In this document: positions 1,294-61,426 of the stretch, piece after piece
How positions within the stretch are numbered: position 1 is the first letter of the stretch
Layout of the letters: each line of letters opens with the position of its first letter
Virus record (IMG/VR): IMGVR_UViG_3300033145_003233
Span: 1 to 64,000 of that record
DNA: 64,000 nt
Reading direction: 5' to 3' (one strand)
Notes under the pieces: model-generated
What the model was told of the DNA's origin: nothing
The model's input: only the letters and a program-made list of their open reading frames with translations
Databases searched by the model: none
Position numbers and translations under genes: made by a program

Positions 1294-1466
1294 TATTTAC
1301 TCTCTAACTCACTTTCTGTATTATCTAAATAATTTTGTATAGCAACCCTCAATCTATTTAAATCATTTCTAGAAAAACAATATCCATCACTTTTTTCTTC
1401 TCTCTTAACAATCAACCAATGTTTATCAGACATGTCTGATTGTTTTATTTCAAATTGATAAATCAT
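1293..1466 (-). CDS. Small hypothetical protein, 57 aa (MIYQFEIKQSDMSDKHW...), between the two fibre genes
   Basis: Hand-translated; fills the gap, and its stop overlaps the next start (TAATG). Confidence 0.55.
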   Translation of the reverse strand: MIYQFEIKQSDMSDKHWLIVKREEKSDGYCFSRNDLNRLRVAIQNYLDNTESELESK

Positions 1467-1472
1467 AATATT

Positions 1473-4400
1473 TTAACTCCAAGTAGTAATTTCTATTTTA
1501 GCCATTTCTACACTGCTCGCATCGTGCATCGTAATCTTTAACCATATTCCCCATCCTGGCCCAGTTCCAACAGCAGTAAAACCTCCTGTTCCAAGGGTAA
1601 AATCTAAACTAGGCATAGTTGTCCCAGGATTAACCCTACATCCGTCTCCATTATTTAAAGCTCCCCCTCCATATAATTCGTTACAATTATACCAATCAGT
1701 TCCATCTAAACTAATTTCTATAATAACATCATCATCTGTTAAATTTTGTTCTGTAACTCCAGTAATATTAAATGTACCATTAGAATGAGCAGTCCCATTA
1801 TGCCACATCCCCCTATAAAAATATCTGTCATTTGCGAGAGAAGAATAATCTGGTTGACTACCAGAACTAGGTTCATAAGCTCCATAATTTACAGATGGAT
1901 AAAATAATTTTGTTCCCTCCCCCACTTGTAACCCCTGACCATCATCAGCAGAAGCTAAGCTAGCTGTGCTATCCCAAGGAGTAGATAAATCATCCTCTAA
2001 TCTCTCATCTTCACTTGTAAAATCTTCCACAATCGCCGTAGAATTATCATTATAAGTATCTATGATAATGGAAGCATTAGCAGAATTAGTATTAGCTCCA
2101 TATCCACTCCAATCCCGAGTATCTGCATATATATTTGCTGTAGTCGTCATAGTATATAGATTAGAACTGCTGATAGTTAAAGCAGCATTAGAATAAGAAG
2201 CATTAACATTATTATAAACATTCGTCCAACTTGTTAAATCTCCTCCAGTTATACTATCAGTAGATATTCCATACTCAGTACATACTAATCTAGCAAAAGT
2301 AGAAAGATAAGTATCTGAATTCATATAATCTAAATCAGCAATAGCCCCTGTAAAAGTGCTACCAGTATCATAATAATAAACGCCTGACTTACGCAAAATG
2401 ACAGGAGTATTCTCTGCTATAGTTACTCCAGATATTGCTTGAGCATTAGGCTCAAGGTCATAAAAAATATTATTTTGTGTATATGTTTGATCCCCATCTC
2501 CAGCATCATGATGGATAATCTCAACACTAAATCTGCCCGATTGTAAAGTATCAAGTATAGTGTCAATATTAAACGTCACTGTTATAATCCCCTTATATTG
2601 ATCAGTATCTGCTGCCCAACTAGTTACTTCTATTTGAATATTGTCTACTGTGACATCAGTATTCCCTGTAATAGCAGCAGTAGTATGAGTTGCTAAAGTA
2701 CTTACTCCATCAGCATCATATACATTAACTTCTATAGTCGTTGTAGAATTATCTTTAAAACTACATGTATTAGAATTAGAACTATAAACACAACTAGCGA
2801 CAGAAGCCCTGATAGCACTTACTGTATCTCCTCCCGACCAGCTTCCTATATTAAAAGGATTACCTTCACCAGTCGGAGCCGCCACAAGTCTGCTAGTTAC
2901 ATTCTTATCATCCACTCTACAATCATTCGTTCCATTATTATCATCAAAATTAGAGACATAAGATGGAGGAGGAACATACACATTTACTTCCCCACTTACA
3001 CAATCTTTTGCCTGAACTGTAGCTCCTTTAAAATTGATAGTAGTTACATTTCCACAAATTAAACTGCCCTCATCTTCTACATTTAAAGACCATCCTCCAA
3101 AATCATGCCCATGTAAGTCATCAGCATTATTAGAAGGGCCACCAACCAATCCCCAATATTGATCTGTATTTAAATGATAATATTCCCCAACCTCTCCTCC
3201 TTGAATACCCACTAGCTCACTATGATCTATAGTAGTATTAATCCATACCGAACCACTCCATTTTAAATATTCATTTGTTTGAAGGTCTATAAGAGAGACA
3301 TCATATAAATCTGACATATTTAAATAACTAGAAGTAAGATCGAATATAGTTGTGCAATAATAATTACCTCCTATTTCTACAATTGTTATTTCATCTCCAT
3401 CATATAGACGAGGGGTTGCCGCATTTAAATCTTCATCTACTGAAGGGTTACTTCCGACAATCAAACAAATAACATTTGCTGGAGTACCGTCTGGAGTATC
3501 TAAATTACATAAAATAACATTTCCTTCAGAAGCATCTTCCTGACAATAAGCTTTTCTACCAGAACCTGAACCGGAAGTGCCGGAACTACCAGCTGAACCA
3601 GAGCTACCTGAACTACCTGATGAACCTGAGCTACCCGAAGTTCCACTACTTCCTGAGCTACCAGAAGTTCCTGAGCTTCCTGAGCTACCACTACTACCTG
3701 ATGTACCGGAGCTACCACTACTACCTGATGAACCTGAGCTACCACTACTACCTGATGTACCGGAGCTACCACTACTACCTGATGTACCGGAGCTACCACT
3801 ACTACCTGATGTACCGGAGCTACCAGCCTCTCCTCCTCCAAACGGAACTCCATTTCCCCAGTATTCATCACAAACAGAAGGATTTCCTAAAACACTAGGA
3901 TTAGCAGGAGGAGTATCATTCCTAAAATATAATAGTCCATTATCAGTATCTAAAAAACTAAATCCTTCTAGTTCATCTATATAATCACAAAGTTCGTTAA
4001 CAGGGCCTTGTACGTCTACACTAAATGAAACACCATCTTGACCTGAGCTACCGGAGCTACCACTACTACCTGAGCTACCACTACTACCTGAGCTACCAGA
4101 GCTACCACTGCTACCTGATGTCCCTGCCGAAGGAATACTAAATATTGTCGTACAATAGTAAACGCTATTTATTTCTACAACTGTAATTTTATCACCATCA
4201 AACAAACGAGGTATAGCATTATTTAAATCTTCATCTACTGAAGGATTGTTACCTGCTATAAAACAAATAACATTTATAAGTGTTCCACCTGGAGTATCTA
4301 GACTACATAAAATAATATTACCTTCAGAAGCATCTTCCTGACAATAAGCCACAGTGCCGATGCCGCTGCCCGTACCCGAAGTCCCAGAAGAACCAGCACT

Positions 4401-5039
4401 TCCCGATGTCCCACTACTGCCAGCACTTCCACCAGCACCTGTCCCTGAATGAACGTGACAACAATCAGCATTACTACCATCAAGTAATTTTCTAAAATTA
4501 ACTATTATGAAAGGGTCTTCATCATCTATATGTTCTAAAAGAGTGTGTGCTTCATCGTGAGCTTTAGTAACAGTATCCTCAATTGTAGCTCCATCAGAAG
4601 ATACATCTGATAATTGATTAATGCTTCCATCTTTTCTTACATACTCATCTATCTCCAAACCATTAATAGCATTATCTATTCCGGTTTGTAATTCAGAATC
4701 TGTTATAAGAGTAGAATGAGTATGTAAACTATCTGCATCAGAGGAAGGTCCTATCGTTAGAATATCTAATCCGCTATGAGTATGAACCTCTAAAGCCCTA
4801 TCATCATGAGTATGCATATACCCAGTAGTAGATATTCTAGGAGGATCTGTTCCTACTCCAACTAGAAGATTTCTATAAACATCAGAAGCAGCCAACCTCT
4901 CAGGAGTGGTGTAGTCTAATGCTTCAATTGTTTCTCCTGGTTGTATCCACGACATCCCCGGTATATCAAAAATTCTTAATCTAACCGGAGAAACATTGGT
5001 TATTTCCCAAGATTCTCTCGGATGCTGAATGTCCGCCAT
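1473..5039 (-). CDS. Tail fibre-like virion protein, 1188 aa, with GSS repeats, HxH motifs and a twice-repeated ~70-aa module
   Basis: Three G-S-S tracts; HTH/HVH/HGH motifs typical of trimeric metal-binding fibre shafts; beta-rich C-terminal half. Confidence 0.75.
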   Translation of the reverse strand: MADIQHPRESWEITNVSPVRLRIFDIPGMSWIQPGETIEALDYTTPERLAASDVYRNLLVGVGTDPPRISTTGYMHTHDDRALEVHTHSGLDILTIGPSSDADSLHTHSTLITDSELQTGIDNAINGLEIDEYVRKDGSINQLSDVSSDGATIEDTVTKAHDEAHTLLEHIDDEDPFIIVNFRKLLDGSNADCCHVHSGTGAGGSAGSSGTSGSAGSSGTSGTGSGIGTVAYCQEDASEGNIILCSLDTPGGTLINVICFIAGNNPSVDEDLNNAIPRLFDGDKITVVEINSVYYCTTIFSIPSAGTSGSSGSSGSSGSSGSSGSSGSSGSSGQDGVSFSVDVQGPVNELCDYIDELEGFSFLDTDNGLLYFRNDTPPANPSVLGNPSVCDEYWGNGVPFGGGEAGSSGTSGSSGSSGTSGSSGSSGTSGSSGSSGSSGSSGSSGTSGSSGSSGSSGTSGSSGSSGTSGSSGSSGSSGSSGSAGSSGTSGSGSGRKAYCQEDASEGNVILCNLDTPDGTPANVICLIVGSNPSVDEDLNAATPRLYDGDEITIVEIGGNYYCTTIFDLTSSYLNMSDLYDVSLIDLQTNEYLKWSGSVWINTTIDHSELVGIQGGEVGEYYHLNTDQYWGLVGGPSNNADDLHGHDFGGWSLNVEDEGSLICGNVTTINFKGATVQAKDCVSGEVNVYVPPPSYVSNFDDNNGTNDCRVDDKNVTSRLVAAPTGEGNPFNIGSWSGGDTVSAIRASVASCVYSSNSNTCSFKDNSTTTIEVNVYDADGVSTLATHTTAAITGNTDVTVDNIQIEVTSWAADTDQYKGIITVTFNIDTILDTLQSGRFSVEIIHHDAGDGDQTYTQNNIFYDLEPNAQAISGVTIAENTPVILRKSGVYYYDTGSTFTGAIADLDYMNSDTYLSTFARLVCTEYGISTDSITGGDLTSWTNVYNNVNASYSNAALTISSSNLYTMTTTANIYADTRDWSGYGANTNSANASIIIDTYNDNSTAIVEDFTSEDERLEDDLSTPWDSTASLASADDGQGLQVGEGTKLFYPSVNYGAYEPSSGSQPDYSSLANDRYFYRGMWHNGTAHSNGTFNITGVTEQNLTDDDVIIEISLDGTDWYNCNELYGGGALNNGDGCRVNPGTTMPSLDFTLGTGGFTAVGTGPGWGIWLKITMHDASSVEMAKIEITTWS
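3570..3826 (-). repeat. In-frame (Gly-Ser/Thr-Ser)n tract; shorter tracts at about 4040-4125 and 4370-4440
   Basis: Tandem ctgatgtaccggagctaccactactac units within the 1188-aa ORF. Confidence 0.9.
4263..4349. repeat. 87-bp segment nearly identical to 1-87; third, more diverged copy at about 3464-3552
   Basis: Direct comparison: 3 mismatches in 87 nt between 1-87 and 4263-4349. Confidence 0.9.
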
Positions 5040-5947: not shown

Positions 5948-6586
5948 TTATGTCTTATCTTTATCCATAGCGGCTGTTCTGTCATCATCGGTGTAAGAAG
6001 CACTTCCTTTAGCCATATAGCATGTTGCATAACTTTTAACAGCACTCTTCATGCCCCGTACTCCTCCGGCAGAAGCTGCAAAATCAAGAGAATCACAAAC
6101 AGCAACTCCGAGACCACCGCCATCTTTAATAGCATCGCTATTGGCCCCGATAAAGGTAAATCCCCATCTGTTTTTCGTCTTCTTTTCTTCGATTAATTCG
6201 AAGACCTTATCTTTGGTGAATTCCCTACTTGAATTTTCCTCACCATCAGTAACGATAACAAACAAGACTCTTTCAGGTCTTTCATCCTCTTCTGCCGCAT
6301 CAAACTTTTCAGAGACGGCATTAATTGTTCTTCCGATCGCATCGAGCAGGGCCGTTGAGCCTCTGGGTTTTAACTCTATTTCGGAAACATCTGCAATAGG
6401 TGTGTCGCTGAAAACTTCTTCATACTGACTGTCAAAACGCACGAAAGTGACTAACATCTCTCCCTTATGCGTCTCTTTTTGATCCTTCAAAACTTCTTTT
6501 ATTGCTCCCGACATATCAGAAGCAATAGTGGACATCGACCCTGATCTATCCACGATAAAAACTAATTTTGCTAAACCTTGTTTCAT
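5948..6586 (-). CDS. von Willebrand factor A (vWA) domain protein
   Basis: MIDAS motifs DRSGSM, GSTALLDA, IVTDGEEN; strong AAGGAG Shine-Dalgarno. Confidence 0.9.
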   Translation of the reverse strand: MKQGLAKLVFIVDRSGSMSTIASDMSGAIKEVLKDQKETHKGEMLVTFVRFDSQYEEVFSDTPIADVSEIELKPRGSTALLDAIGRTINAVSEKFDAAEEDERPERVLFVIVTDGEENSSREFTKDKVFELIEEKKTKNRWGFTFIGANSDAIKDGGGLGVAVCDSLDFAASAGGVRGMKSAVKSYATCYMAKGSASYTDDDRTAAMDKDKT

Positions 6587-6672
6587 TTCAAATCTCCTTT
6601 ACTAACTCTAACTCTATACTAACACTAACTTTACATTAAAAACCATTCCACACGAATGGTCAATCTTTCCCT

Positions 6673-6700
6673 ATTATACCATAAATTTTTCACTTTTCAA
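6673..6700 (-). promoter_or_regulatory. sigma70-like promoter TTGAAA-AGTGA-N-TG-n-TATAAT (16-bp spacer)
   Basis: Same architecture at 6791-6818, 7755-7782 and 45496-45523. Confidence 0.7.
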
Positions 6701-6701
6701 G

Positions 6702-6740
6702 AAAAAAATAAAAAGGCAGAACCCAACGAATCCTGCCTTT
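6702..6740 (-). terminator. Intrinsic terminator
   Basis: AAAGGCAG/CTGCCTTT stem plus T-rich tail. Confidence 0.7.
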
Positions 6741-6788
6741 CTTCCCCGCCTCCATGTCCCCCCAGAAAACATATCTTCATTCTCCATG
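6702..6788 (-). ncRNA. Candidate GGA-rich small RNA (possible CsrA/RsmA sponge) or 29-aa micro-ORF
   Basis: Bounded by the promoter at 6791-6818 and the terminator at 6702-6740; ACATGGAG twice plus 3 more GGA. Confidence 0.35.
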
Positions 6789-6790
6789 TT

Positions 6791-6818
6791 ATTATACCAT
6801 TATTTTTTCACTTTACAA
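6791..6818 (-). promoter_or_regulatory. sigma70-like promoter TTGTAA-AGTGA...TGG-TATAAT
   Basis: Near-copy of the 6673-6700 promoter. Confidence 0.7.
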
Positions 6819-7568
6819 GTTTATTTTTAAAATATTTGACATTTCATTATAAAACCTGATATCATATTTATTCATTTGTCTTAATAACTTACGAACTTTT
6901 TTATCTTTCCATCCAACTCTAGGCTTATTCTTCGAAACATTACTCCTTTTTAGAGATTTTTTCTTCCATCCTAATTTATCACTTAATTTCTTAAAATCAT
7001 TAACATAATTCTCTTGAAAACCTACAAAATAATAATTATTCAAAAGATTGTACTTTGCTGCTTCATAAAATTTCTCCATTTCATCTTCAGAATATTTCTT
7101 TTTCCTTGAAGTGTAAATATATGTATATTTTATTCCTGGCACTCTAATAATATTAGAAAGATCTTCTAATCCCGATAGCATCTTTACCATTACATTACAA
7201 TGCATATCATTTTTTAAAACATAGCTCAAAAAAGAAATTATATTCCCCCTAGCTTTCTTTATCCATAATTCTCTGCGATAAGAGGTATTTGTAGTAAAAA
7301 TAGTTTTATTAAAAAAAGATTTCCATCTTGATATAGGATTTCTTAAAAAAGTAATATATTTAATATCTTTGGTATCTGGAAAATATTTATGACACCCATA
7401 AGCCACATGCCCTACAGCAAATTTATATTTGTCTGGATAAGAAGGAGGAGGATCACTGTATTCTTTCCTATGAAACCTTGTAACGGTTCTCTTTCTGCGA
7501 TATTCTTTATAAGAATATTCTATTAAAGCCCTACCACCTGTCCTCGGTATATGTGTGAAAATTATCAT
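6813..7568 (-). CDS. Sulfotransferase family (Sulfotransfer_2-like) protein
   Basis: 5'-PSB-like IFTHIPRTGG and 3'-PB-like FLRNPISRWKS motifs; terminal DIRFY motif. Confidence 0.75.
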   Translation of the reverse strand: MIIFTHIPRTGGRALIEYSYKEYRRKRTVTRFHRKEYSDPPPSYPDKYKFAVGHVAYGCHKYFPDTKDIKYITFLRNPISRWKSFFNKTIFTTNTSYRRELWIKKARGNIISFLSYVLKNDMHCNVMVKMLSGLEDLSNIIRVPGIKYTYIYTSRKKKYSEDEMEKFYEAAKYNLLNNYYFVGFQENYVNDFKKLSDKLGWKKKSLKRSNVSKNKPRVGWKDKKVRKLLRQMNKYDIRFYNEMSNILKINL

Positions 7569-18548: not shown

Positions 18549-18965
18549 TTATCCCTTAACGTGTCTTGGTATTTCTATGGCTGCTAACTGATCAACTGAA
18601 TATTTAGGGGCACCTTTCGGAAATGGTATCCCCCATTTTTCAGAAGTATGACTTAAAGCTGCTACAGATGTAGTAAAATATTCTCCGCTAGGAGCATAAA
18701 CTTTTTTTGTTGGATCATCAGGTAATTTTTTTATTCCAGCAAAAAACATTTTCTTTCCTTCTTTGGTTAACGAAGGTCCCATAATTACAAAATAATCTGA
18801 ATCAGTTGTATAATCATGTCCTTCCCATCTTATATATGACAAAGGCCCTATGTCTTTATCAAATCTCTCTTTTAGCCTTTTAGACCTCTCATGATAAGCT
18901 GGTTCCCATTTAATTCCTCTATCTTTGATTCTTTTTCTACCAGCATATTTTAATATATTAGTCAT
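18549..18965 (-). CDS. Hypothetical protein downstream of portal
   Basis: Overlaps portal stop; MTNILKYAG. Confidence 0.75.
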   Translation of the reverse strand: MTNILKYAGRKRIKDRGIKWEPAYHERSKRLKERFDKDIGPLSYIRWEGHDYTTDSDYFVIMGPSLTKEGKKMFFAGIKKLPDDPTKKVYAPSGEYFTTSVAALSHTSEKWGIPFPKGAPKYSVDQLAAIEIPRHVKG

Positions 18966-21243
18966 TAGCTACATTCCCTATACATAAAATCTGACCATGT
19001 GGAATAGATGTTCTATTACATCCTATCTTGCCCTTCGAAAGACAAGCCTCGTATTGAGGATTATTCCCATTTATAGAAGCATACTTGATAAATTCTTTAT
19101 CTTCACTCGCTGCCTTATGGTTTCTTGCTGCTTCAGATATATGTTTAAAAACAGTATCAGATACAGTATCCATATTTTCATTAATAGCTTCTTCATTAAA
19201 TCTCAAAATTCTCCATCCAACATTCGCCAACTTCTGATCTCTATTTAAATCTCTTTGTTGAAAATCCTCTCTTTCATGCCAAATAGCTCCATCAATCTCT
19301 ACCCCAACTCCTATCCTAGGATAGGCGAAATCAATAGAATAAGGCCTCCCTTCCCCTGGAACCTTGATTTGATACTGAGCATATAATTCATAAGGTTGTT
19401 TCAAAGAAGTTAAAACCTTAAACATCTTTTGCTCTAACTTTGTTAATTTTATCATTTTAGGAGGTGGACCTTGTTCTTCTTCTTGTTGTTGCTGACTTTG
19501 TGATCCTCTTTTTCCTATCTTAGGCAAAGGAGTTTCAGCAGAAGCGGCCATACCCATACCGCCACCCATACCACCGCCCATACCTCCACCCATGCCGCCT
19601 CCCATGCCGCCTCCCATGCCGCCGCCCATATCTCCTCCTGCTCCAGGCATGCCTCCCATGCCTTCTCCTCCCATATCCGCTGGCATACCGCCCATACCTG
19701 CGCCCATGCCCATCGTCCCTAAATTACCAGCCTGATCTCCACCAGCAACCATACCGCTAGCAGATGCCATTATCTGCTCCTGTCTTATTTTCTCTACCTC
19801 AGAATCATAATCTAAATCTAATTCATCTAAAATTGTCTCAGCAGAAACCAGACCTTTATCATAACATTGTAACAATGTCTGTATTCTGTTGGTTTTATCT
19901 CTAAGTTGTAAATCATTCCATATTAATTCAGGATAAAGATAAACAACCTTTCCCATTTCTTTTGATTCTTTTTCATCTATAAATCCCTGCATCATAGCAA
20001 GAGGTAAAAAGACATTTTTCTCTACCCATAATTTTAATTTATTTCTCCAGTTGTCTAATCTTCTGATAAGAACCTCTACACCAACCTGAGCACTTGTATA
20101 ACCAGCCATTTCTCCATTTAGAATTGCCTGATTCAACATTAAACCATCTAAAATTTCTTTCCCGACTTGCTCTAACTCTTGTGTTATATTATGAATCTTA
20201 CCTGTAGCTCCATACCACTCATAATCAAAAGCATGATGAGTAACAATTGTAAGATTAGGATCATTAGCAACAGCAGACAATTGATTCTGAACATCTTGCA
20301 AATCATTATCTGTAGCAGGACGATCTTTATCACCTATTTTAACAACTCTAACCGGAAGAATCAATCTCTCAGCAACAATCCAGTTGGCAGTCATAATTTT
20401 AGTTTTATATGCTAAAACAGTAAATAATCTCTGAAGCATAGAAGTGCCATAAGTTCCATAATCGCTTGCATTATGCTTTAAATGACTGATACACCTATCT
20501 GATAATGGAACAGGCTGACCAGTAGCAACTAGGTCGACTAGAGATTGTGGCAAACTATCATAAATACTTCTGGGTTCTTTTCTCTGTACAATCAATTTTA
20601 ATTCTTCATCAGGCATTAAATAATATTCAGGATTATTAGCAATAGGATTATCTCTTACTTCTATATAATCAGGATTCATTAATTTTATGGTTTTAAATTT
20701 ACCATCCGGATGATTGCATTTCTCTCCCTTTTCATCCCTACCTCTACCCCCGCAATGAGGACAATCAATTTCTGTAAATGGGAAAACATCTCCCAATAAA
20801 AAATATTCATGACTAACGCTATTTAATTTATCTGTAAGATCTAAAGTCTTTACCATATCTTCGAAAAATTTTAGTATCTTTCTAGACTTACATTCTAATT
20901 TAAAACCATTCATACTAAAATTAGCATAAAAATCTACTCCTGCTGCCACCTTAGGTTCATTCATATAGTAGAACCTAGCCCATTGCATAATCTCTCTTCT
21001 TCTACTAGCAATCTGCCAGTTTTGAGGAGTATGTAAAGGACTAAAGAACATAGGTTGCGTCCATGCAACACTAGCTCCAGCTCCAGCGTATTGAGCATTT
21101 TTAGTAATAGGAAAATTAGCAGTTACGGATGACGCATATTTTTTATTAGCTCTTGGTCCACTTGATGAATTATAAGCTCCAGAAGCCGCCACCATTCTTT
21201 GTTTGTTTTTAGGTGAATTATCTGATACAATGAATTTAGCCAT
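18958..21243 (-). CDS. Portal protein with Gly-Met linker and C-terminal DUF559 (Vsr-like) nuclease domain
   Basis: Portal-like core (NPDYI; HLKHNA...YGTSML; LILPVRVVKIG) in head-module position; IDFAYP..GVEIDGAIWH...RDQKLANVGWRILRF is a DUF559 signature. Confidence 0.78.
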   Translation of the reverse strand: MAKFIVSDNSPKNKQRMVAASGAYNSSSGPRANKKYASSVTANFPITKNAQYAGAGASVAWTQPMFFSPLHTPQNWQIASRRREIMQWARFYYMNEPKVAAGVDFYANFSMNGFKLECKSRKILKFFEDMVKTLDLTDKLNSVSHEYFLLGDVFPFTEIDCPHCGGRGRDEKGEKCNHPDGKFKTIKLMNPDYIEVRDNPIANNPEYYLMPDEELKLIVQRKEPRSIYDSLPQSLVDLVATGQPVPLSDRCISHLKHNASDYGTYGTSMLQRLFTVLAYKTKIMTANWIVAERLILPVRVVKIGDKDRPATDNDLQDVQNQLSAVANDPNLTIVTHHAFDYEWYGATGKIHNITQELEQVGKEILDGLMLNQAILNGEMAGYTSAQVGVEVLIRRLDNWRNKLKLWVEKNVFLPLAMMQGFIDEKESKEMGKVVYLYPELIWNDLQLRDKTNRIQTLLQCYDKGLVSAETILDELDLDYDSEVEKIRQEQIMASASGMVAGGDQAGNLGTMGMGAGMGGMPADMGGEGMGGMPGAGGDMGGGMGGGMGGGMGGGMGGGMGGGMGMAASAETPLPKIGKRGSQSQQQQEEEQGPPPKMIKLTKLEQKMFKVLTSLKQPYELYAQYQIKVPGEGRPYSIDFAYPRIGVGVEIDGAIWHEREDFQQRDLNRDQKLANVGWRILRFNEEAINENMDTVSDTVFKHISEAARNHKAASEDKEFIKYASINGNNPQYEACLSKGKIGCNRTSIPHGQILCIGNVAND

Positions 21244-53782: not shown

Positions 53783-54700
53783 CTACATATCTGAAGTTAT
53801 AGTTTTTTTGTTAAGAAACTCATTTAATTGTTGTTTATTATTGTTTCTTTTCCCATACGTTTTATGAAAACCGTTATGGCATTCTTGACATAATACCCTC
53901 CCATTAGAAACCTTTGTTCTTAATTTTTTATTATCAGCATATCCTCGAATATGATGTGCATTTATTTTTTTATATTTGTTGTTCTTATCTTTTTTATTTT
54001 TACATTTTTGACAAATATAATTATCTCTTTTATATACTTTTTTTCTCCACTCTTCGTATCCTGGGAGCTTTCTATTAAGAATTCTGTCTTCATTAGTTAG
54101 ATTCGAATTATAATTATAATTATTTTTTCCTGTCGTTCTTTCTACCCCACATTTATTACATCTATGACCATTTTTAAAATGATAAAACTTTGTTGTACTA
54201 ATATTTTTGCAACTACATTTATATTTTATTTTAGTACGAGAATTTATATATCCTTTTTCTAATAATTCACAATCTTGCTCTTTAAAATAATTATAAACAT
54301 ATTCGAAAGTAAATTTTTCGCTACCTCCACATTTTGTACACCTTTCTCCTAATTTAAAATTAGCAAGACGTATTCCACTAATATTCCCGCACTTGCACCT
54401 ATATCTCATTTTAGTGTGAGAATTTATATATTTTTTTTCTAATAACTCACAGCCTTGTTTCTTAAAATAACTATAAACATATTGAAAAGAAAATTGTCTA
54501 TCTTTTCTTAATTGTTTATTGGCACAGTTTTGACATCTTCTTCCTTGCTTAAAATTATCAAAATTTATTTTATTTATATTTCCACATTCACATCTATATT
54601 TCATTTTAACTTTACAATTTTTATACTCTTTCTCCAACAGCTTGCATCCATGCTCTTTAAAATATTGTTCAACATATTCATAAGCCAATTTCTTACCCAT
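53783..54700 (-). mobile_element. HNH homing endonuclease with three tandem Zn-ribbon repeats (start MGKKLAY)
   Basis: 3x (YEYV..YF...GCELL...Y.N...KM.Y.C.CG...RC..C) plus WRKKVYKRD...AHHI...NG..LC..CH..FH. Confidence 0.85.
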
Positions 54701-54912
54701 TTTCTCTCCAATAAAAAAAGAGTAAAGTCTAATCCTAAACTCCGATAAAGGAAAAGACAATACTCTTTATATTATATAATCTATATTTTTACTAAAATAC
54801 TTTAATTCGGAGTTTAAGTATTCTAATCATTATATATTCTATATTTTATCTTATATCCCTTTTTTATTATTATTAAAATGTCGATATAATAATATACTTA
54901 AAATAAACAGAT

Positions 54913-55407
54913 ATGGGGTATAAAATGAAAAAATATGAAAAACAAAATAAAGCGACAATAGCATTAGCTAAAAAGTTAAATATTGATAATATTGAAGATA
55001 AATTATTTTATACAAGTTATGGGAGAGTTACAGATAGAGAGGAAAAATATGATATAAAAAGAATAAGTGAAAAAAATGCAAAAACTTATATTGTTTATTT
55101 TTTCTATGATTTATGTTATGATGGTGTTAGTGAAATTCTAAGAATATTTTGTTGTTATAATAATGAGCACAAGGTTGCTATTCTATTAAAAGGAGCAAGT
55201 GATTTTATTGTTTCAGTGGAAAGGGTGGAAGAATTTCTTGAAGAATATAAGAATGCTATTATAAAAAAGAAGAAAGAATTATTTTATAAATATTATCCTA
55301 TGGAGAATAGACTTCCCATAGACAACGAAGAAGAATTTATTTTGGTAGAAAATAATAGGGATGAAGATGACGATTACACTTTTGAAGTCAAACTTGATAT
55401 GATATAA
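54913..55407 (+). CDS. Hypothetical protein
   Basis: Isolated plus-strand ORF. Confidence 0.6.
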   Translation: MGYKMKKYEKQNKATIALAKKLNIDNIEDKLFYTSYGRVTDREEKYDIKRISEKNAKTYIVYFFYDLCYDGVSEILRIFCCYNNEHKVAILLKGASDFIVSVERVEEFLEEYKNAIIKKKKELFYKYYPMENRLPIDNEEEFILVENNRDEDDDYTFEVKLDMI

Positions 55408-55427
55408 CGACCCTCCTCCTCGATGTT

Positions 55428-57880
55428 CTAGATTATAAGTTCTTCTACTAGTGTCCCATTGACAACTATTTGAAGACTTCCTTCTTCCGCTATATATTCT
55501 ATATAAACATCTTCATCTTCTCCCTCAATAGAAGAACTGCTGGAGCTTACAGAGCTGCTTGAGCTTACGGAACTACTTGAGCTACTCACAGATGAGCTAC
55601 TTGAACTTACCGAGCTACTTGAACTTGAAACTGATGAACTACTAACAGATGAACTGCTCGAACTTGAAACAGACGAACTGCTTACTAAACTACTACTTGA
55701 GCTTATAGAACTAGAGCTTACAGAACTAGAGCTTACAGAACTAGAGCTACTGCTAACCGAAGAACTACTAACTGAACTACTGCTTGAGCTTATAGAACTA
55801 GAGCTTACAGAACTAGAGCTACTACTAACCGAAGAACTACTAACGGAAGAACTGCTTGAACTTATTGAGCTACTAGAGCTGCTATCTTCTGCTACACTAC
55901 TACTACTTGAACTTACTGAACTACTTGAACTTGAAACCGAAGAACTACTAACAGATGAGCTGCTTGAGCTTACTGAACTACTTGAGCTTGAAACTGATGA
56001 GCTACTAACAGATGAGCTGCTTGAACTTACTGAACTACTTGAGCTTGAAACTGATGAGCTACTAACAGATGAGCTACTTGAACTTACTGAACTACTTGAG
56101 CTTGAAACTGATGAGCTACTAACAGATGAGCTACTTGAGCTTACTGAACTACTTGAGCTTGAAACTGATGAGCTACTAACAGATGAGCTACTTGAGCTTA
56201 CTGAACTACTTGAGCTTGAAACTGAAGAACTACTAACTGAACTACTGCTAGAGCTTACAGAACTAGAGCTTACAGAACTAGAGCTGCTACTAACCGAAGA
56301 ACTACTAACTGAAGAACTGCTTGAGCTTATTGAACTACTAGAGCTGCTATCTTCTGCTGCGCTACTGACCGAAGAACTACTTACTGAACTGCTGCTAGAA
56401 CTTACCGAACTACTTAAGCTTGAAACTGACGAACTACTTACTGAACTGCTGCTAGAACTTACCGAACTACTTGAGCTTGAAACTGATGAGCTACTTACTG
56501 AACTAGAGCTTGAACTTATAGAGCTAGAACTTACAGAACTAGAGCTTACAGAACTAGAGCTGCTACTAACCGAAGAACTACTAACTGAAGAACTGCTTGA
56601 GCTTATTGAACTACTAGAGCTGCTATCTTCTGCTGCGCTACTGAAGAACTGCTTACTGAACTACTTGAACTACTAATTGATGAGCTACTTACAGAGCTGC
56701 TAGAACTTGAAACTGACGAACTGCTTACTGAACTACTAGAACTTGAAACTGACGAACTGCTTACTGACGAACTGCTTGAGCTTACTGAACTACTTGAACT
56801 TGAAACTGACGAACTGCTTACTGAGCTACTAGAACTTGAAACTGACGAGCTGCTTACCGAACTACTGCTTGAACTTACTGAGCTACTTGAGCTTGAGACT
56901 GATGAACTGCTAACAGATGAACTGCTAGAGCTTACTGAACTACTTGAGCTTGAGACTGATGAACTACTTATAGAAGAACTTGAGCTTGAGACTGATGAAC
57001 TACTTACAGAAGAACTTGAGCTTGAGACTGATGAACTACTTACAGAAGAACTTGAGCTTGAGACTGATGAACTACTTATAGAAGAACTTGAGCTTGAGAC
57101 TGATGAACTACTTACTGATGAACTGCTAGAACTTACTGAACTACTGCTGACAGATGAGCTACTAGAACTTACTGAACTACTAGAGCTTGAAATTGATGAA
57201 CTGCTTGATGATCCCTCCGGCAATATTTCAAGAAGATGACCACAATTTTCGTCACTAAAACCACCAGCCCAGTCAATTATTATTGAATCAGGTGCCCCGC
57301 CTATTTTATCTCCGACATAGAAACTTTCATCTTGAGAAGTAGAACCTCCTCCAGTCTCACCATTAGCGATTTGAAAAAATCCAGCACCTCCTGTAGTAAC
57401 AGGAGATCCATCTGCTCCATAAGCACAAGCCACTGCAAATAATGTACTTCCTGTTGTTGCCGAGCCAGATGGCAGAACAGTTGTTGTTGTAAGACTATTA
57501 TTTACATCTTCACTGAGAAAATTAGTAGCATCGGCTACTGAGCTATTAATCGTTCCAAGATAATTAACTGCCGTGGAATGAGTATGGGCATCAGTAGTTT
57601 GTGTAAAAGTAATATTAGCGATTCCGGGAGAGGGATTAACTCGCCCATAAGTAGTGATTTTTTTATCTCCGCCACTAGAAGTGTCATTTGTAGTAGCATC
57701 AATAATAGAAAGAGTCTCAGTTGTATTCCCTGCAGGTGCAATACTAATACTCTCATTAGCATCCTGAGTAACAGTGACAACAAGGAGAGTCGTCCCTTCA
57801 TCAACCTCATGCACATAAGTTATCTCACTTGCATTATCGGTCAATGTATATGTTGTATATTGTCCTCTAGTTATTGCCAT
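55428..57880 (-). CDS. Giant poly-Ser virion/adhesin-like protein interrupted by one frameshift near 56642 (about 818 codons if restored)
   Basis: ORF 56603-57880 drifts out of frame. The Ser frame continues without stops in the segments checked to ...SIEGEDEDVYIEYIAEEGSLQIVVNGTLVEELII* at 55428. Confidence 0.75.
55530..57211 (-). repeat. About 560-codon low-complexity (S4-7-V/I)n tract with three S-A/V-A-E-D punctuation units
   Basis: Hierarchical gagctact/gaactact repeats; AED units near 55885, 56350 and 56628. Confidence 0.92.
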
Positions 57881-57981
57881 TAATCACCTTTTTGATTATT
57901 TGCTCCAAACATATACTAGTTATATTTGAAATGGTAAAAACCTCTAAAACAATGAGGGAAGGGGGTGTTTTCTTCTTTAAT

Positions 57982-58482
57982 CTATATGATTTTATCTACA
58001 ATAGACTTTAGAAATTCTTTTTCTTTATCATTATAGCTAAATCTATCTTGATTCTTCTCAAGAGAGGCAAAGATATTTCCATCAGTATGTCTCTTAGTGG
58101 CTGCAATCCAATCTGCTGTCATTTCTAGCTTGTCAAGATGTGATAGCCCTTGATATCCATCTTTATAATATTCTGGATGATGACTATTTTTGCTATAATG
58201 TAGGGTGATACATGGTTTAATACATTTTAACATCTCTCTATATTCATCTGTCCCATAAGTTATTGTTTTTAATTTAAAAGCAACTTTTGCAAAATATTTT
58301 GCTTCTGCCCAAAAAAATTTATCAAGATCATGTACCAAACCTCTTTTAAACAATGCCCATTTATCTGGATGTTTAATTTTAAAATTAATTTTTATGATGT
58401 AATAAAAAACCCATAATTTATGCCGAGATACCTGAACGTGTCCCCAAAAATATCCTGCCCAAAAAACAATTAACTTCTTCAC
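57982..58482 (-). CDS. HD-superfamily DUF5662-like protein
   Basis: H..SRHK..V; GLVHDLDKF; HY..NSHHPEY; EM.ADW. Confidence 0.75.
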   Translation of the reverse strand: MKKLIVFWAGYFWGHVQVSRHKLWVFYYIIKINFKIKHPDKWALFKRGLVHDLDKFFWAEAKYFAKVAFKLKTITYGTDEYREMLKCIKPCITLHYSKNSHHPEYYKDGYQGLSHLDKLEMTADWIAATKRHTDGNIFASLEKNQDRFSYNDKEKEFLKSIVDKII

Positions 58483-58484
58483 CC

Positions 58485-58850
58485 TTATTTTTCTTTCAAA
58501 TTATTATCGATGTATATATCATGTTCTTTATCTATAGCATTAAGAAATTCTATCATAGACCATGTAAATCCCATTGCAGTAAATCCGCTGAAAGGCCAGA
58601 AAAAATAAGGACAACCCAATAAGGTAGAAACAATACAAATAACTATATCAGCTACTAAAGCTCCCCAGAAAGAAGTGCAAGTGGTACAAAAAAGCATTTG
58701 TGGAAGTTTATAATGTATCTTTCTTAAAAAGAATTGTATTCTTATCCTAAACGGTCTTACAGGCCAATCTTTCCCTTTTTCAACGAAGGTAACAGCAAGA
58801 CCAAAAGATAGCAAAACAGACATAACTAGACATATAAAAAAATTAAACAT
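58485..58850 (-). CDS. Membrane protein (DUF1360-like)
   Basis: Three hydrophobic segments; LFCTTCTSFW. Confidence 0.6.
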   Translation of the reverse strand: MFNFFICLVMSVLLSFGLAVTFVEKGKDWPVRPFRIRIQFFLRKIHYKLPQMLFCTTCTSFWGALVADIVICIVSTLLGCPYFFWPFSGFTAMGFTWSMIEFLNAIDKEHDIYIDNNLKEK

Positions 58851-58870
58851 ACTAATATATCGTCTTTTTG

Positions 58871-58899
58871 CAGGATTTAGTAAAATATCTCCAAATATA
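58871..58899 (+). promoter_or_regulatory. Putative phage-sigma promoter CAGGATTT-N12-CCAAATAT, giving a near-leaderless mRNA
   Basis: Matches the RAGGWTTT class; ATG 7 nt after the -10 box; no SD. Confidence 0.5.
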
Positions 58900-58905
58900 T
58901 AACTT

Positions 58906-59280
58906 ATGAATTGGTATAAAAGATCACAATTATCTACTGTAGATGTTATAGAAGATCATAATAAGGATTATTTAGAGATAGGACATGATTATTATCGTGG
59001 CAAAAACCCCCCTCCTAATAAACCTAATTATCTTTGGATGTTTCATAATGGAGAAATATTATATGAAGAAGAAACCTCTGAACGGTCGAACCATGGAATG
59101 GTAGAAGAATGGAAAATTCTAAGCGGAGATATATTTAGTGGTAGATTTGAATCTGCTACAGGTTCGTTAAGTATTAGTAGACCTCAAACTGGGGTGAGAG
59201 AATATCTTCCCATTCCTAAATCTATACTGTATAAATTATATCAAAAATTTCCTGGAATAAAACAAGTTTATATTTTTTAA
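58906..59280 (+). CDS. MNWY-leader protein; paralog of the C-terminal domain of the next gene
   Basis: IGH, NYLW, GRFES.TG.LS..RP and KLYQKF.GIKQ shared. Confidence 0.85.
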   Translation: MNWYKRSQLSTVDVIEDHNKDYLEIGHDYYRGKNPPPNKPNYLWMFHNGEILYEEETSERSNHGMVEEWKILSGDIFSGRFESATGSLSISRPQTGVREYLPIPKSILYKLYQKFPGIKQVYIF

Positions 59281-59284
59281 AATT

Positions 59285-61426
59285 ATGAGTTGGTATAAAA
59301 AAGCACAATTAAGTAAAAAACTTCTTAAAAACATTGAGAAGAAGAAGCAAATTTCTCTTCAAAAAGGATGGACTCCTGAAGAGGTAAATTGGGTTGCGGA
59401 TATATCAACCAAACTTAATGACCCATCTTATTTTCTATGGTTATTGGAGCAAACCAGAAATGGCAGTGCTAACATACAAACTAGAGAAGATGATAAAAAA
59501 ATATTTGAAGCATTGGAGAAATTTGATGAACTTAAAAAGAAAAAACTTATTTCAGAAGATATTAATAAATTCAAAACATTTGCTGATTTATATGAAGTAG
59601 TTAAAGACTTTTTAGAACAACAGGGTCGATCTTATATGCAAGATGTCGGATCAATGGGAGGGGCAAAACTTCTTTATAACGAGAATAATATATCTGTCAT
59701 TGAAGTAAGAAACTCTAAAGCTGGTCAAGAATTATTCCGAGATTCAGGGTGGTGTGTAAAAGAGCCTGAACAATTTGACCATTATGGCCCTCCTTTCTAT
59801 CTATTTAGAAAATACAACGAGAACTATGCCTTGTTCCATGCAAAATATGGAGACTTTAAAGACGTAGCAGATAAATCAATGAGAATGAGAGAAACAATTC
59901 CATTGCTTCCATCTTTTAATTTTTTATTTCAATCAGAAATAATTGATCCAAAGAAGCAGAGATTAGGAGATATAAGAGTTATTCCTGAAATTATGCAACA
60001 AAAAGAAACAACAAATAAACTTTGCGAAATTGGAGATATGCAAGCTTTAGACAATGTTATAAGTAGCGACTTAGAATATTCCAATCTTATTGAAAAATTT
60101 AATTTAACACCTGAAATAGTAGATTTGGTAAAGAATAACTTTTTAAAAACACGGGGAAAACTGTCAAAACCTGAAGAAATTAATGATTTTTATCACAGTA
60201 TTCCTGTCTATTTAGATCAAGCAGGAATTTTACCGACAGAGCAAGAAAAATCAATTGTTAGTGGTGCTATGGATATTAGTATAGATAGAGATTCTTATGA
60301 GATGCTTGAAAAAGGGTATTTAGATCTCAACTACCCTTCAAAAATAGTTAGAAACCTAGAGACTATAAATAATTTATACAGGAAATTACACAAATCACTA
60401 AAAACCGACAAAATAAAAAGAGAAGCTGTTCGATGGAATAAAATGATAATAAAAAGCGCCCCCGAAGCTATTGAATTATGGGCTATGCTTCCTGAGGAAT
60501 TAAAAAGAGAATGCCTTCCAGAAGCTCAAAAAGGGGCGGCAGATGAAATTCGCCGTGATCCTAAACTATATTATGATCCTGAACAACAAAAACAAATCCC
60601 ACCGGAATTAATAACAGAAAATCTTAAAAATGCTTCTTATAGAGGAGTTTTACAACTACTTCCAAAAAAACCTTATCTATCATGGGAACAAAAGATTCCT
60701 CCAGAATTTCGCACTGACGACTTTGACAATATCCTTTATGAAGCCCGCATTAAAGGAGTTCCCACTAAATTTTCTTCATGGGAAGATATGGACGAGATAT
60801 TTAAAACAAAAGAGTTATGGAATAAATTTTACTCTTTAGCTTTAAATAGTATTCAAAACAGTTATAGCCCTTCAATTATTAGTCGCATACCAGATGAGTT
60901 TAAAACAGAAGAATTGATTGCTCTTTATTACCAACATCATTCTGAACAAGCACAAGATTATCTTCCTGCTAAGATTATGCAGCAACAAAAAGAATTATTA
61001 GAACAACAACTTCAAAATAAAGTAAACACCCCTGAGCAAGTAGATCCTCTACAATCCGAACACAAAACCAATTGGTATAAAAAATCTCAATTATCAACTA
61101 TAGACGTGCCGGAAAATCACAATAGAACCTACATGGATATAGGGCATGAGGGGCTTGATGATGAAAATCCTAATTATTTATGGGTTTTATATGATGGAGA
61201 AATATTATCTGAACAAGAGGACCCTGGTCTTCCACAACATCCTGATTTGTGGCCTAACATAAATTTTGGAAAAGTATTTTGTGGGAGATTTGAATCTTCT
61301 ACAGGAGCGCTAAGCGTTCATAGACCGCTTGATAATGCCATGGTGAGGAATAGACCTGTCCCAAAATCAATACTATTTAAATTATATCAAAAATTTCAAG
61401 GAATAAAACAAATTTACACCTTTTAA
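59285..61426 (+). CDS. MSWYKKAQ-leader multidomain protein (PcfJ-like WC domain, helical repeats, fused internal NWYKK module)
   Basis: SGWCV motif; IP.EF.T repeats; internal TNWYKKSQ at about 61067. Confidence 0.8.
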   Translation: MSWYKKAQLSKKLLKNIEKKKQISLQKGWTPEEVNWVADISTKLNDPSYFLWLLEQTRNGSANIQTREDDKKIFEALEKFDELKKKKLISEDINKFKTFADLYEVVKDFLEQQGRSYMQDVGSMGGAKLLYNENNISVIEVRNSKAGQELFRDSGWCVKEPEQFDHYGPPFYLFRKYNENYALFHAKYGDFKDVADKSMRMRETIPLLPSFNFLFQSEIIDPKKQRLGDIRVIPEIMQQKETTNKLCEIGDMQALDNVISSDLEYSNLIEKFNLTPEIVDLVKNNFLKTRGKLSKPEEINDFYHSIPVYLDQAGILPTEQEKSIVSGAMDISIDRDSYEMLEKGYLDLNYPSKIVRNLETINNLYRKLHKSLKTDKIKREAVRWNKMIIKSAPEAIELWAMLPEELKRECLPEAQKGAADEIRRDPKLYYDPEQQKQIPPELITENLKNASYRGVLQLLPKKPYLSWEQKIPPEFRTDDFDNILYEARIKGVPTKFSSWEDMDEIFKTKELWNKFYSLALNSIQNSYSPSIISRIPDEFKTEELIALYYQHHSEQAQDYLPAKIMQQQKELLEQQLQNKVNTPEQVDPLQSEHKTNWYKKSQLSTIDVPENHNRTYMDIGHEGLDDENPNYLWVLYDGEILSEQEDPGLPQHPDLWPNINFGKVFCGRFESSTGALSVHRPLDNAMVRNRPVPKSILFKLYQKFQGIKQIYTF

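What the first reader, a model, noticed from the sequence alone, without database searches (positions are those of the whole stretch)
55428..57880. About 560-residue poly-serine stalk with a single frameshift: phase variation or assembly slip
Seen: a beta-rich ~220-aa N-terminal domain, then a tract of roughly four-fifths Ser, then a short acidic/beta C-terminal cap. At about 56642 the unit reads TCT TCA GTA GCG where the sister unit at 56350 reads TCT TCG GTC AGT AGC GCA, a 4-nt loss that truncates the protein before the cap. Inference: a slipped-strand ON/OFF or length switch for a surface appendage whose C-terminal cap may be the virion anchor.
Basis: partly seen in the sequence, partly recalled or inferred. 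Interest (0 to 1): 0.6.

Follow-up and report, generated by a model that had tools for sequence, protein, structure and literature searches.

The report
Huge-phage poly-serine fibre gene, broken frame
A 548-kb phage carries one gene for a conserved beta-sandwich head, a record-length (about 560-residue) poly-serine spacer and a small C-terminal cap, and the 4-base frame break inside it looks more like an assembly error at a long repeat than a biological ON/OFF switch.

Summary
On the minus strand (ATG 57880, stop 55428) lie a 223-aa all-beta N-domain, a 559-residue tract (82% Ser, Val/Ile every 5-7 residues) and a 33-aa acidic/beta cap. One 4-nt loss at 56644/56645 shifts the frame, giving a 425-aa product.

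The switch reading is not supported:
- Repeat units are multiples of 3.
- Every repeated k-mer (k>=8) keeps one reading frame (6637 same-frame pairs, 0 cross-frame).
- The lost GGTC is not in a tetranucleotide array.
- There is no slippery heptamer or RNA structure.

The break lies at the edge of a 115-nt exact repeat. Genome-wide, the three longest exact repeats are 116, 115 and 115 nt, with none longer. Each is bounded on one side by a frame-breaking deletion relative to its twin, with intact coding downstream. That suggests an assembler limit (k near 117). No reads or independent assemblies could be obtained, so this stays an inference (about 0.6).

The N-domain belongs to an uncharacterised phage family (125 clusters). 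Homologues carry repeat stalks and a similar acidic-hydrophobic C-terminus, so the pieces probably form one gene. Poly-Ser linkers recur in at least four other proteins of this phage.

The parts
57884..57890 (-). Shine-Dalgarno-like AAGGTGA, 3-4 nt upstream of the ATG at 57878-57880
   Evidence: Read directly from the sequence.
57212..57880 (-). N-terminal domain, 223 aa (P0001). It is a two-lobed all-beta sandwich and belongs to an uncharacterised phage protein family.
   Evidence: AF2 model with pLDDT 94 and pTM 0.92. 125 representative clusters at E<=1e-3. No Pfam or PHROG hit. BFVD matches at TM 0.6-0.77, many named minor tail protein. ESM Atlas viral clusters at TM up to 0.91. No convincing PDB match. 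Single copy in the genome.
56645..57211 (-). Poly-Ser/Val tract, first part, 189 codons in the frame of the ATG
56641..56648 (-). Frame break. Four bases (GGTC on the coding strand) are absent relative to the sister unit at 56365-56368. The break falls between 56644 and 56645.
   Evidence: Adding the twin's 4 nt would lengthen the exact repeat from 115 to 125 nt.
56603..56644 (-). Out-of-frame tail of about 11 codons (AQQKIAALVVQ) and the TAA stop of the 425-aa product as assembled
56530..56644 (.). 115-nt exact repeat, copy 1. Its high-coordinate edge is the frame break.
56254..56368 (.). 115-nt exact repeat, copy 2 (the sister unit with the intact frame)
55530..56641 (-). Poly-Ser/Val tract, second part, about 370 codons in the +2 frame. 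This frame has no ATG, GTG or TTG until GTG 55589.
55428..55529 (-). C-terminal cap of 33 aa (an acidic run, then hydrophobic beta-type segments) plus the TAG stop
   Evidence: Homologues with repeat stalks end in a comparable acidic run followed by a hydrophobic tail (P0020, P0006, P0018, P0019, and the L002 ORF at 6001-7461). BLASTP found no alignment between the cap and the P0020 C-terminus.

Best explanation
Positions 55428-57880 (minus strand) hold one gene of a 548-kb phage. It encodes a fibre-like or appendage protein of about 818 aa. The protein has a conserved N-terminal beta-sandwich domain, a roughly 560-residue poly-serine spacer that takes the place of the 14-20-aa beta-repeat stalks of its homologues, and a small acidic/hydrophobic C-terminal cap.

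The spacer is probably an extended, flexible and possibly O-glycosylated tether, a giant version of bacterial polyserine linkers. Replication slippage or recombination can change its length but not its frame.

The 4-nt frame break at 56644/56645 is most likely not the true dominant sequence. It looks like a local assembly error, or a rare variant picked up by the assembler, at a repeat longer than the assembler could resolve.

Shown: the anatomy, the family relationship, the frame-preserving design of the repeats, and the repeat-length ceiling with three breaks at its edges. Inferred: the technical origin of the break, and the tether function.
For: One gene:
- One RBS and ATG, a single frame change, and no start codon in the downstream frame for 357 codons.
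- Homologues have the same N-domain followed by a repetitive stalk, and several end in a similar acidic-plus-hydrophobic C-terminus.
- They lie in phage genomes next to terminase or portal genes.

Break probably technical:
- The genome-wide maximal exact repeats are 116, 115 and 115 nt, then 103, 91 and 86. None reaches 117.
- Each of the three top repeats is a 100%-identical patch inside otherwise diverged paralogues or sister units.
- Each is bounded on its high-coordinate edge by a deletion relative to its twin that breaks the frame, while the downstream coding part stays intact. The deletions are -4 nt here; a net -10 nt with loss of the EESVHG..FTE segment in the LamG paralogue at 533069/70; and -73 nt in the membrane-protein paralogue at 168339/40.
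- With the twin's 4 nt restored, the repeat here would be 125 nt, which is above the ceiling.
- Long conserved genes elsewhere in the window are intact, for example the 816-aa RNR and an 1868-aa ORF, so breaks are confined to repeats.
- Consensus sequence unsupported by any read, and errors in repeat-bearing genes, are documented for short-read metagenome assemblies (PMC7111523).

Not a switch:
- One search found 0 cross-frame repeated k-mers.
- One search shows that all periods are multiples of 3.
- No X_XXY_YYZ heptamer lies in 56606-56660, and the downstream RNA fold has a z-score of -0.05.

Tether reading:
- The tract is 82% Ser, like known polyserine linkers, which average 80-83% Ser and 39-44 aa (PMC2699552).
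- At least four other proteins of this phage use poly-Ser linkers between a head (two of them LamG) and a small C-terminal module.
- The phage encodes tRNA-Ser(GCU) and tRNA-Ser(UGA). These match the AGY and TCA codons that make up 81% of the tract's Ser codons, whereas TCT dominates in the rest of the genome.
Against: - No reads and no independent assembly could be examined, so the technical origin is circumstantial.
- A pure de Bruijn path needs read support for every k-mer. I could not work out an exact mechanism that leaves a deletion at the edge of a (k-2)-long patch.
- The assembler and its k are unknown.
- A fourth frame break, in the GSS collagen-like gene at about 546672, is not at a long repeat, so the ceiling idea does not explain every break in this genome.
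- The gene does not sit in a recognisable tail module here. Its neighbours are an HNH endonuclease, a DUF5662 protein and NAD-synthesis genes.
- Glycosylation and virion association are untested.
Confidence: 0.6

Rival explanations
1. The frameshift is real and fixed or dominant. A recent 4-nt microhomology deletion (TC..TC) truncated the gene. The phage would then make a 425-aa protein (N-domain, 190 aa of poly-Ser and an 11-aa out-of-frame tail). The downstream 1.2 kb would be an untranslated remnant that has not yet decayed.
For: Most family members consist of the N-domain alone at about 240 aa, so a truncated product would keep a complete functional domain. De Bruijn assemblers normally emit only k-mers seen in reads. 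No exact repeat in the tract reaches 117 nt, so the tract was in principle resolvable. Another frame break at about 546672 is not linked to a long repeat, which shows that frame breaks may be real in this population.
Against: It would take three independent out-of-frame deletions, each at the edge of a 115-116-nt identical patch, to arise by chance. The 410 downstream codons remain open and end in a cap that resembles the C-termini of homologues. The downstream frame has no start codon, so 1.2 kb would be dead weight.
Confidence: 0.25
2. Population heterogeneity or phase variation. Intact and shifted alleles coexist, and the phage toggles between a capped long fibre and a truncated one.
For: Phages can use hypermutable tracts in receptor-binding genes. 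Campylobacter phage polyG tracts are an example (Sorensen et al. 2021, Cell Rep 35:109214, as listed in the references of PMC10877375). An assembler could have picked one of two coexisting alleles. Repeat-bearing surface-type genes are over-represented among the broken genes of this genome.
Against: There is no homopolymer and no tandem unit that is not a multiple of 3. All repeated k-mers are frame-preserving. The lost GGTC has only 2-nt microhomology, so precise reversion would be rare. Recombination inside the 115-nt repeat keeps the break. No read data exist.
Confidence: 0.07
3. Chimeric join. The assembler fused two different poly-Ser genes inside the low-complexity tract, so the head and the cap belong to different proteins.
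For: The genome holds several poly-Ser genes. The contig itself ends in repeats at both ends. The join lies at a repeat edge.
Against: Homologues show the same architecture of head, stalk and acidic/hydrophobic C-terminus. The Ser/Val punctuation (S4-6 then V or I) and the AED units are the same on both sides of the break, unlike the S/L/Q style of the other poly-Ser genes. There is no composition or GC-skew discontinuity at 56.6 kb.
Confidence: 0.06
4. Programmed -1 (or +2) ribosomal frameshift or translational bypass. This would produce both the 425-aa protein and the full-length protein from the sequence as assembled.
For: The overlap of the two frames (56606-56660) is short and the downstream frame is fully open. 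Tailed phages do use programmed frameshifts in tail genes (established knowledge, the G/GT chaperone paradigm).
Against: The overlap has no X_XXY_YYZ slippery heptamer and no homopolymer run (read). The downstream 146 nt fold no better than shuffles (z -0.05). The sister unit shows that the site is simply 4 nt short.
Confidence: 0.02

Closest known systems
Polyserine linkers (PSLs) of Saccharophagus degradans, Teredinibacter turnerae and Cellvibrio japonicus carbohydrate-active enzymes (Howard et al. 2004; PMC2386152, PMC2699552)
   Same: The tract is about 80% serine and joins folded modules. It recurs in many proteins of one genome, and its codon use mixes AGY and TCN.
   Different: Known PSLs average 39-44 residues and sit in secreted bacterial enzymes between catalytic and carbohydrate-binding modules. 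This tract has 559 residues, lies in a phage protein, is punctuated by Val or Ile every 5-7 residues, and shows a higher-order structure marked by AED units.
The uncharacterised phage N-domain family found here (125 representative clusters; for example P0020, P0015, P0006 and the L002 ORF at 6001-7461)
   Same: The N-domain aligns over its full length at 39-53% identity. The architecture is head, repetitive stalk and short C-terminus. The genes lie in phage genomes.
   Different: In homologues the stalk is built of 14-20-aa beta-type repeats, sometimes with LamG-like inserts or coiled coils. Only this member has a poly-Ser stalk. Here the gene is not beside terminase or portal genes.
Actinobacteriophage 'minor tail proteins' (BFVD models, for example from Mycobacterium phages Gaia, Hawkeye and Tweety)
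   Same: Predicted fold of the N-domain, TM 0.6-0.77 over about 225 residues.
   Different: Sequence identity is only 10-18%. The comparison is between predicted models. The name rests on annotation, not on a test done here.
Slipped-strand contingency loci, including hypermutable polyG tracts in Campylobacter phage receptor-binding genes (Sorensen et al. 2021)
   Same: A repeat tract inside a surface-protein gene, with a frame change that truncates the product.
   Different: Those tracts are homopolymers or units not divisible by 3, so slippage itself changes the frame reversibly. Here every repeat preserves the frame, and the 4-nt loss lies outside any such array.
Serine-rich repeat adhesins of Gram-positive bacteria (Fap1, GspB)
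   Same: A very long Ser-rich stalk that would hold a binding domain away from a surface. In those proteins the stalk is O-glycosylated.
   Different: This protein has no signal peptide, no SxSx dipeptide repeat, no LPXTG anchor and no accessory Sec context, and it is a phage protein.

Membership tests
Slipped-strand (phase-variable) contingency locus | Homopolymer or tandem repeat with a unit length not divisible by 3 at the site of the frame change | tested here: not met
   Periods are 36, 57, 72 and 93 nt. There are 0 cross-frame repeated k-mers against 6637 same-frame pairs at k=8. The lost GGTC is not tandemly repeated.
Slipped-strand (phase-variable) contingency locus | Coexisting ON and OFF alleles in a population | not testable with these tools
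   No sequencing run was listed. No near-identical contig turned up in viral or metagenome collections. The 425-aa ORF is a singleton cluster.
Programmed -1 ribosomal frameshift | Slippery heptamer X_XXY_YYZ in the overlap of the two frames | tested here: not met
   None is present in 56606-56660, read codon by codon.
Programmed -1 ribosomal frameshift | Stable stimulatory RNA structure just downstream | tested here: not met
   MFE -30.4 kcal/mol against a shuffle mean of -30.2, z -0.05.
Polyserine linker (PSL) proteins | Tract of about 80% Ser joining folded modules | tested here: met
   82% Ser over 559 residues between the N-domain and the cap.
Polyserine linker (PSL) proteins | Length of tens of residues, in secreted carbohydrate-active enzymes with CBMs | tested here: not met
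   559 residues against a mean of 39-44. No CAZy-type or CBM Pfam hit. No signal peptide is visible at the N-terminus.
   phmmer E-values from 1e-58 to 1e-20 over residues 1-220. The profile hits the locus at 2.6e-72.
   Met only if the gene is read through the break. The likeness of the cap rests on motif alone, since BLASTP found no alignment.
Phage tail fibre / minor tail protein | Structural likeness to known tail proteins | tested here: inconclusive
   BFVD predicted models named minor tail protein match at TM 0.6-0.77. No solved structure matches: Foldseek TM<0.3 and VIA Z<=5.4 over half-domains.
Phage tail fibre / minor tail protein | Position in the tail or structural gene module | tested here: not met
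   The neighbours are an HNH endonuclease, a DUF5662 protein and NAD-metabolism genes. The portal, terminase and collagen-like fibre genes lie 18-55 kb away. Small-phage homologues do sit beside terminase or portal genes.
Phage tail fibre / minor tail protein | Presence in the virion | not testable with these tools
   Needs proteomics or cryo-EM.
Serine-rich repeat adhesins (SRRP) | Long signal peptide, SxSx dipeptide repeats and an LPXTG anchor | tested here: not met
   The protein starts MAITRGQ with no hydrophobic leader. The repeat is S4-6 followed by V or I. The protein ends ..EELII.

The most novel reading that the evidence does not exclude
The break is real and heterogeneous. Under this reading a huge phage carries a set of repeat-bearing surface proteins (the poly-Ser fibre, a LamG poly-Ser protein and a collagen-like fibre) whose distal modules are switched off and on, or changed in length, by indels at repeat edges. 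That would give a population a mix of appendage forms. The giant poly-Ser stalk would be serviced by the phage's own tRNA-Ser genes and possibly glycosylated by its many glycosyltransferases.
Probability: 0.07. Interest if true: 0.65.

Novelty: new variant of a known kind. Interest (0 to 1): 0.3.

Why it matters
If the break is technical, gene calls for this and at least two other genes of the public record are wrong. The pattern found here may also be useful more widely. A pile-up of exact repeats at one maximum length, each with an indel at one edge, is a cheap, read-free flag for local misassemblies in metagenomic virus genomes.

Independent of the break, a 560-residue poly-serine spacer in a phage protein is more than ten times longer than the known bacterial polyserine linkers. 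Together with at least four more poly-Ser-linked proteins and matching phage tRNA-Ser genes, it suggests that some huge phages use long flexible (possibly glycosylated) tethers in place of rigid beta-repeat fibres. That idea can be tested by virion proteomics and cryo-electron tomography.

The N-domain family (125 clusters, no Pfam or PHROG entry, no solved structure, confident model) is itself an unnamed and widespread phage module.

Tried and rejected
- **Read evidence.** The look-up of sequencing runs on 54000-60000 listed no run, so read laying could not be used.
- **Independent copies.** A junction pattern allowing 0-4 extra bases found nothing in viral contigs or metagenome contigs. A degenerate pattern for the conserved ATNFLSEDVNN motif found only the 41%-identical L002 contig. 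tblastn of the N-domain against 50,697 phage records found nothing. The word search and the full representative search found no close relative, the best non-self hits being 39-53% identical.
- **Families.** Pfam and PHROGs gave no hit for the N-domain or the cap. A PDB profile search gave nothing. Foldseek against the PDB and VIA-align wide gave only generic jelly-roll or bicupin half-matches.
- **Antisense reading.** Coding of the ELLELTE.. frames on the plus strand was considered and rejected, because they have no start codon and no RBS, and the minus strand carries the folded domain.
- **Another genetic code.** Not invoked. Table 11 gives long intact ORFs across the window.
- **Programmed frameshift.** Rejected.
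- **Ceiling idea and the fourth break.** Removing 4 nt at about 546672 gives only a 38-nt repeat, so that break remains unexplained.
- **Cap homology.** BLASTP of the cap against the P0020 C-terminus gave no alignment.
- **Not run.** Complex prediction and a fold of the cap were left out, because neither result would bear on whether the break is real.
Full report
**Setting.** The window is the first 64 kb of a single 547,943-bp virus record, linear and estimated 100% complete. GC content is 33.6%. Table 11 gives long intact ORFs.
- The window holds a portal gene, a large terminase, a collagen-like tail-fibre gene, ribonucleotide reductase, a sigma factor and NAD-synthesis genes.
- The closest large terminase in 50,697 phage records is 26% identical, in an uncultured 485-kb phage. 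This is therefore a distant, uncultured huge phage.

**Observation.** The gene lies on the minus strand. An AAGGTGA Shine-Dalgarno motif precedes the ATG at 57880.
- Frame 0 runs to a TAA at 56603-56605, giving 425 aa.
- The +2 frame is open from 56660 to 55431 and ends in the cap.
- The N-domain has 223 aa.
- The two tract parts together hold 559 residues: 460 Ser (82%), 76 Val and 10 Ile, plus three short A(A)ED punctuation units.
- The cap has 33 aa.
- At 56644/56645 the coding strand lacks the four bases GGTC that the sister unit at 56365-56368 has.

The open plus-strand frames (ELLELTE..) have no start codon and are a by-product of the Ser codon choice.

**What the protein is.**
- *No named family.* The N-domain has no Pfam or PHROG family.
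- *Many relatives.* An exhaustive phmmer search found 125 representative clusters, 90 of them at E<=1e-10. Many are stand-alone proteins of about 240 aa. Others carry the domain at the N-terminus of proteins of 300-1300 aa.
- *Repeat stalks in the long members.* The long members have strongly repetitive stalks of 14-20-aa units, as in P0015, P0020, P0006 and the 486-aa ORF of L002. None of the representatives of 300 aa or more is Ser-rich.
- *Similar C-terminus.* Several of the stalked members end in an acidic run followed by a hydrophobic tail, as this gene's cap does. BLASTP does not align the caps.
- *Phage context.* Homologues sit in small phage genomes beside terminase or portal genes.
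- *Confident model.* With a 59-sequence alignment, AlphaFold2 gives an all-beta, two-lobed model with pLDDT 94 and pTM 0.92.
- *Fold matches.* No solved structure matches convincingly. Many predicted viral models do match at TM 0.6-0.77, several of them annotated as minor tail proteins of actinophages. Viral clusters of the ESM Atlas reach TM 0.91.
- *Single copy.* The domain occurs once in this genome.

Taken together, head, stalk and cap form one gene of a fibre-like phage protein family, and here the usual beta-repeat stalk is replaced by poly-serine.

**Poly-serine in this phage.** At least four other ORFs contain poly-Ser tracts of about 40-190 residues between a head and a small C-terminal module of about 50 aa. 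In two of them the head is a Laminin_G_3 domain.
- The phage has 29 tRNA genes, including tRNA-Ser(GCU) and tRNA-Ser(UGA).
- The tract uses AGT, AGC and TCA for 81% of its Ser codons, whereas TCT is the commonest Ser codon elsewhere in the genome.
- At least eight GT2 glycosyltransferase genes are present. This allows glycosylation but does not show it.
- Known bacterial polyserine linkers are 80-83% Ser but only 39-44 residues long on average.
- A full-text search found no description of poly-serine in phage proteins.

**Is the break a switch?** The tract is built so that slippage cannot change the frame.
- All TRF periods are multiples of 3.
- Every repeated k-mer from k=8 to k=21 occurs in a single reading frame, with 6637 same-frame pairs and 0 cross-frame pairs at k=8.
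- The lost GGTC is not part of a tetranucleotide array and has only TC..TC microhomology.
- Unequal recombination inside the 115-nt repeat would keep the broken junction.
- There is no slippery heptamer in the 56606-56660 overlap, and the downstream RNA folds no better than shuffles.
- The downstream frame has no start codon for 357 codons.

The sequence design therefore does not support a reversible ON/OFF switch or a programmed frameshift. In-frame length variation remains plausible.

**Is the break real?** No sequencing run was listed. No second copy of the gene exists in the collections searched. The argument therefore rests on internal evidence.
- The break lies exactly at the edge of the longest exact repeat of the tract, 115 nt (56254-56368 = 56530-56644).
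- Genome-wide, the maximal exact repeats are 116, 115, 115, 103, 91 and 86 nt, with none of 117 or more.
- The three top repeats are perfectly identical patches inside otherwise diverged sequence.
- Each is bounded on its high-coordinate side, which is the 5' side of a minus-strand gene, by a deletion relative to its twin. That deletion breaks the frame while the downstream coding sequence remains intact.

The three cases:

| Case | Position | Change relative to the twin |
|---|---|---|
| This gene | 56644/45 | -4 nt |
| LamG poly-Ser paralogue | 533069/70 | Its C-terminal module, identical to that of its neighbour, lies out of frame directly behind the Ser tract |
| Membrane-protein paralogue | 168339/40 | 73 nt missing; 37 C-terminal codons out of frame |

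- With the twin's 4 nt, the repeat in this gene would be 125 nt.
- A sharp ceiling at 115-116 nt is what a de Bruijn assembly with k near 117 would impose.
- Three frame breaks at the edges of exactly those repeats are hard to explain as independent mutations.
- Consensus sequence unsupported by any read, and errors in repeat-bearing genes, are known in short-read metagenome assemblies (PMC7111523).

Several points count against this reading.
- I could not derive the exact algorithmic path that would leave such a deletion.
- The assembler is unknown.
- A fourth break, in the GSS collagen-like gene at about 546672, is not at a long repeat.

I therefore put the technical origin at about 0.6 and a real dominant truncation at about 0.25. 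The remaining rivals are heterogeneity or phase variation (0.07), a chimeric join of two poly-Ser genes (0.06) and a programmed frameshift (0.02).

**How it most likely works.** This part is inferred. The full-length protein would be about 818 aa. It would place a conserved beta-sandwich module and a small cap at the two ends of a very long, flexible, hydrophilic tether.

Which end is fixed to the particle is open.
- The family-wide conservation of the N-domain, and its likeness to minor tail protein models, favour an N-terminal anchor.
- The shared small C-terminal modules of the phage's other poly-Ser proteins favour a C-terminal anchor.

The gene's neighbours (an HNH endonuclease, a DUF5662 protein and NAD-synthesis genes) give no help.

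**Verdict.** The anatomy is confirmed. The frameshift is probably an assembly artefact and is not a designed switch. The poly-Ser stalk is an unusual, probably real feature: a new variant of polyserine-linked modular proteins, found in a member of an unnamed phage family. Interest is modest (0.3) until reads are seen.

Noticed in passing
Whole genome (G000). Repeats at 106684-106799 = 168224-168339, 532955-533069 = 534858-534972, and window 56254-56368 = 56530-56644: The longest exact repeats of the 548-kb record are 116, 115 and 115 nt, with none longer. Each is a perfect patch within diverged paralogues and has a frame-breaking deletion at one edge. This is a likely signature of the assembler's k.
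   Followed up: yes
L015:2268-4013 (genome 533067-534812, minus strand); break at genome 533069/70: A protein with two LamG domains and a poly-Ser tract stops right after the tract. Its C-terminal module of about 38 aa is 100% identical in DNA to that of the neighbouring paralogue (534851-536530) and lies in another frame.
   Followed up: partly
L017 (genome 168000-168700) compared with L018 (genome 106400-107400): A paralogue of a small membrane protein lacks 73 nt next to the 116-nt identical patch, so its last 37 codons are out of frame.
   Followed up: partly
Window 1-5039 and genome 545899-547943: Both contig ends lie in collagen-like G-S-S / G-T-S repeat genes (tail-fibre PHROG hits). 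The record therefore probably broke in a repeat of a circular or permuted genome. One of these genes has a further frame break at about 546672, where extra bases give TAGTTAGT.
   Followed up: partly
Genome 281948-283480, 530917-531750, 533067-534812 and 534851-536530 (L015, L016): Four more proteins have poly-Ser linkers (S with L, Q, I or V interruptions, about 40-190 aa). In most of them a shared small C-terminal module of about 50 aa follows (..KITAYEAVYI..). Two of the heads are Laminin_G_3.
   Followed up: partly
Genome 65-183 kb (outside the window): There are 29 tRNA genes, including tRNA-Ser(GCU) and tRNA-Ser(UGA). These match the AGY and TCA codons that dominate the poly-Ser tract, whereas TCT is the commonest Ser codon in the rest of the genome.
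   Followed up: partly
Window 58906-59280 and 59285-61426 (plus strand): The 124-aa ORF and the last 125 aa or so of the adjacent 713-aa ORF are paralogous (both have ..WYK+SQLST+DV.. near the start and end in ..LYQKF.GIKQ+Y.F). The 713-aa ORF also starts with the same motif. No family was found.
   Followed up: no
Window 18958-21243 (minus strand): The portal protein (PHROG portal hits over residues 20-490) carries a C-terminal extension that matches HNH endonuclease families (residues 604-726).
   Followed up: no
Window 53783-54760 (minus strand): An HNH endonuclease with three tandem copies of a Cys-rich module of about 55 aa (..GC.LLEK.Y.N...K..Y.C.CGN..) lies two genes from the poly-Ser gene.
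   Followed up: no
Window 55507-56676 and 56610-57239 (plus strand): The antisense frames of the tract are open for 389 and 209 codons (Leu/Glu/Thr-rich) but contain no ATG, GTG or TTG. This is a side effect of using AGY and TCA codons.
   Followed up: yes
Genome, 8 places (L007-L014): At least eight GT2-family glycosyltransferase genes lie in the phage genome. They are compatible with glycosylation of Ser-rich proteins but are not evidence for it.
   Followed up: no
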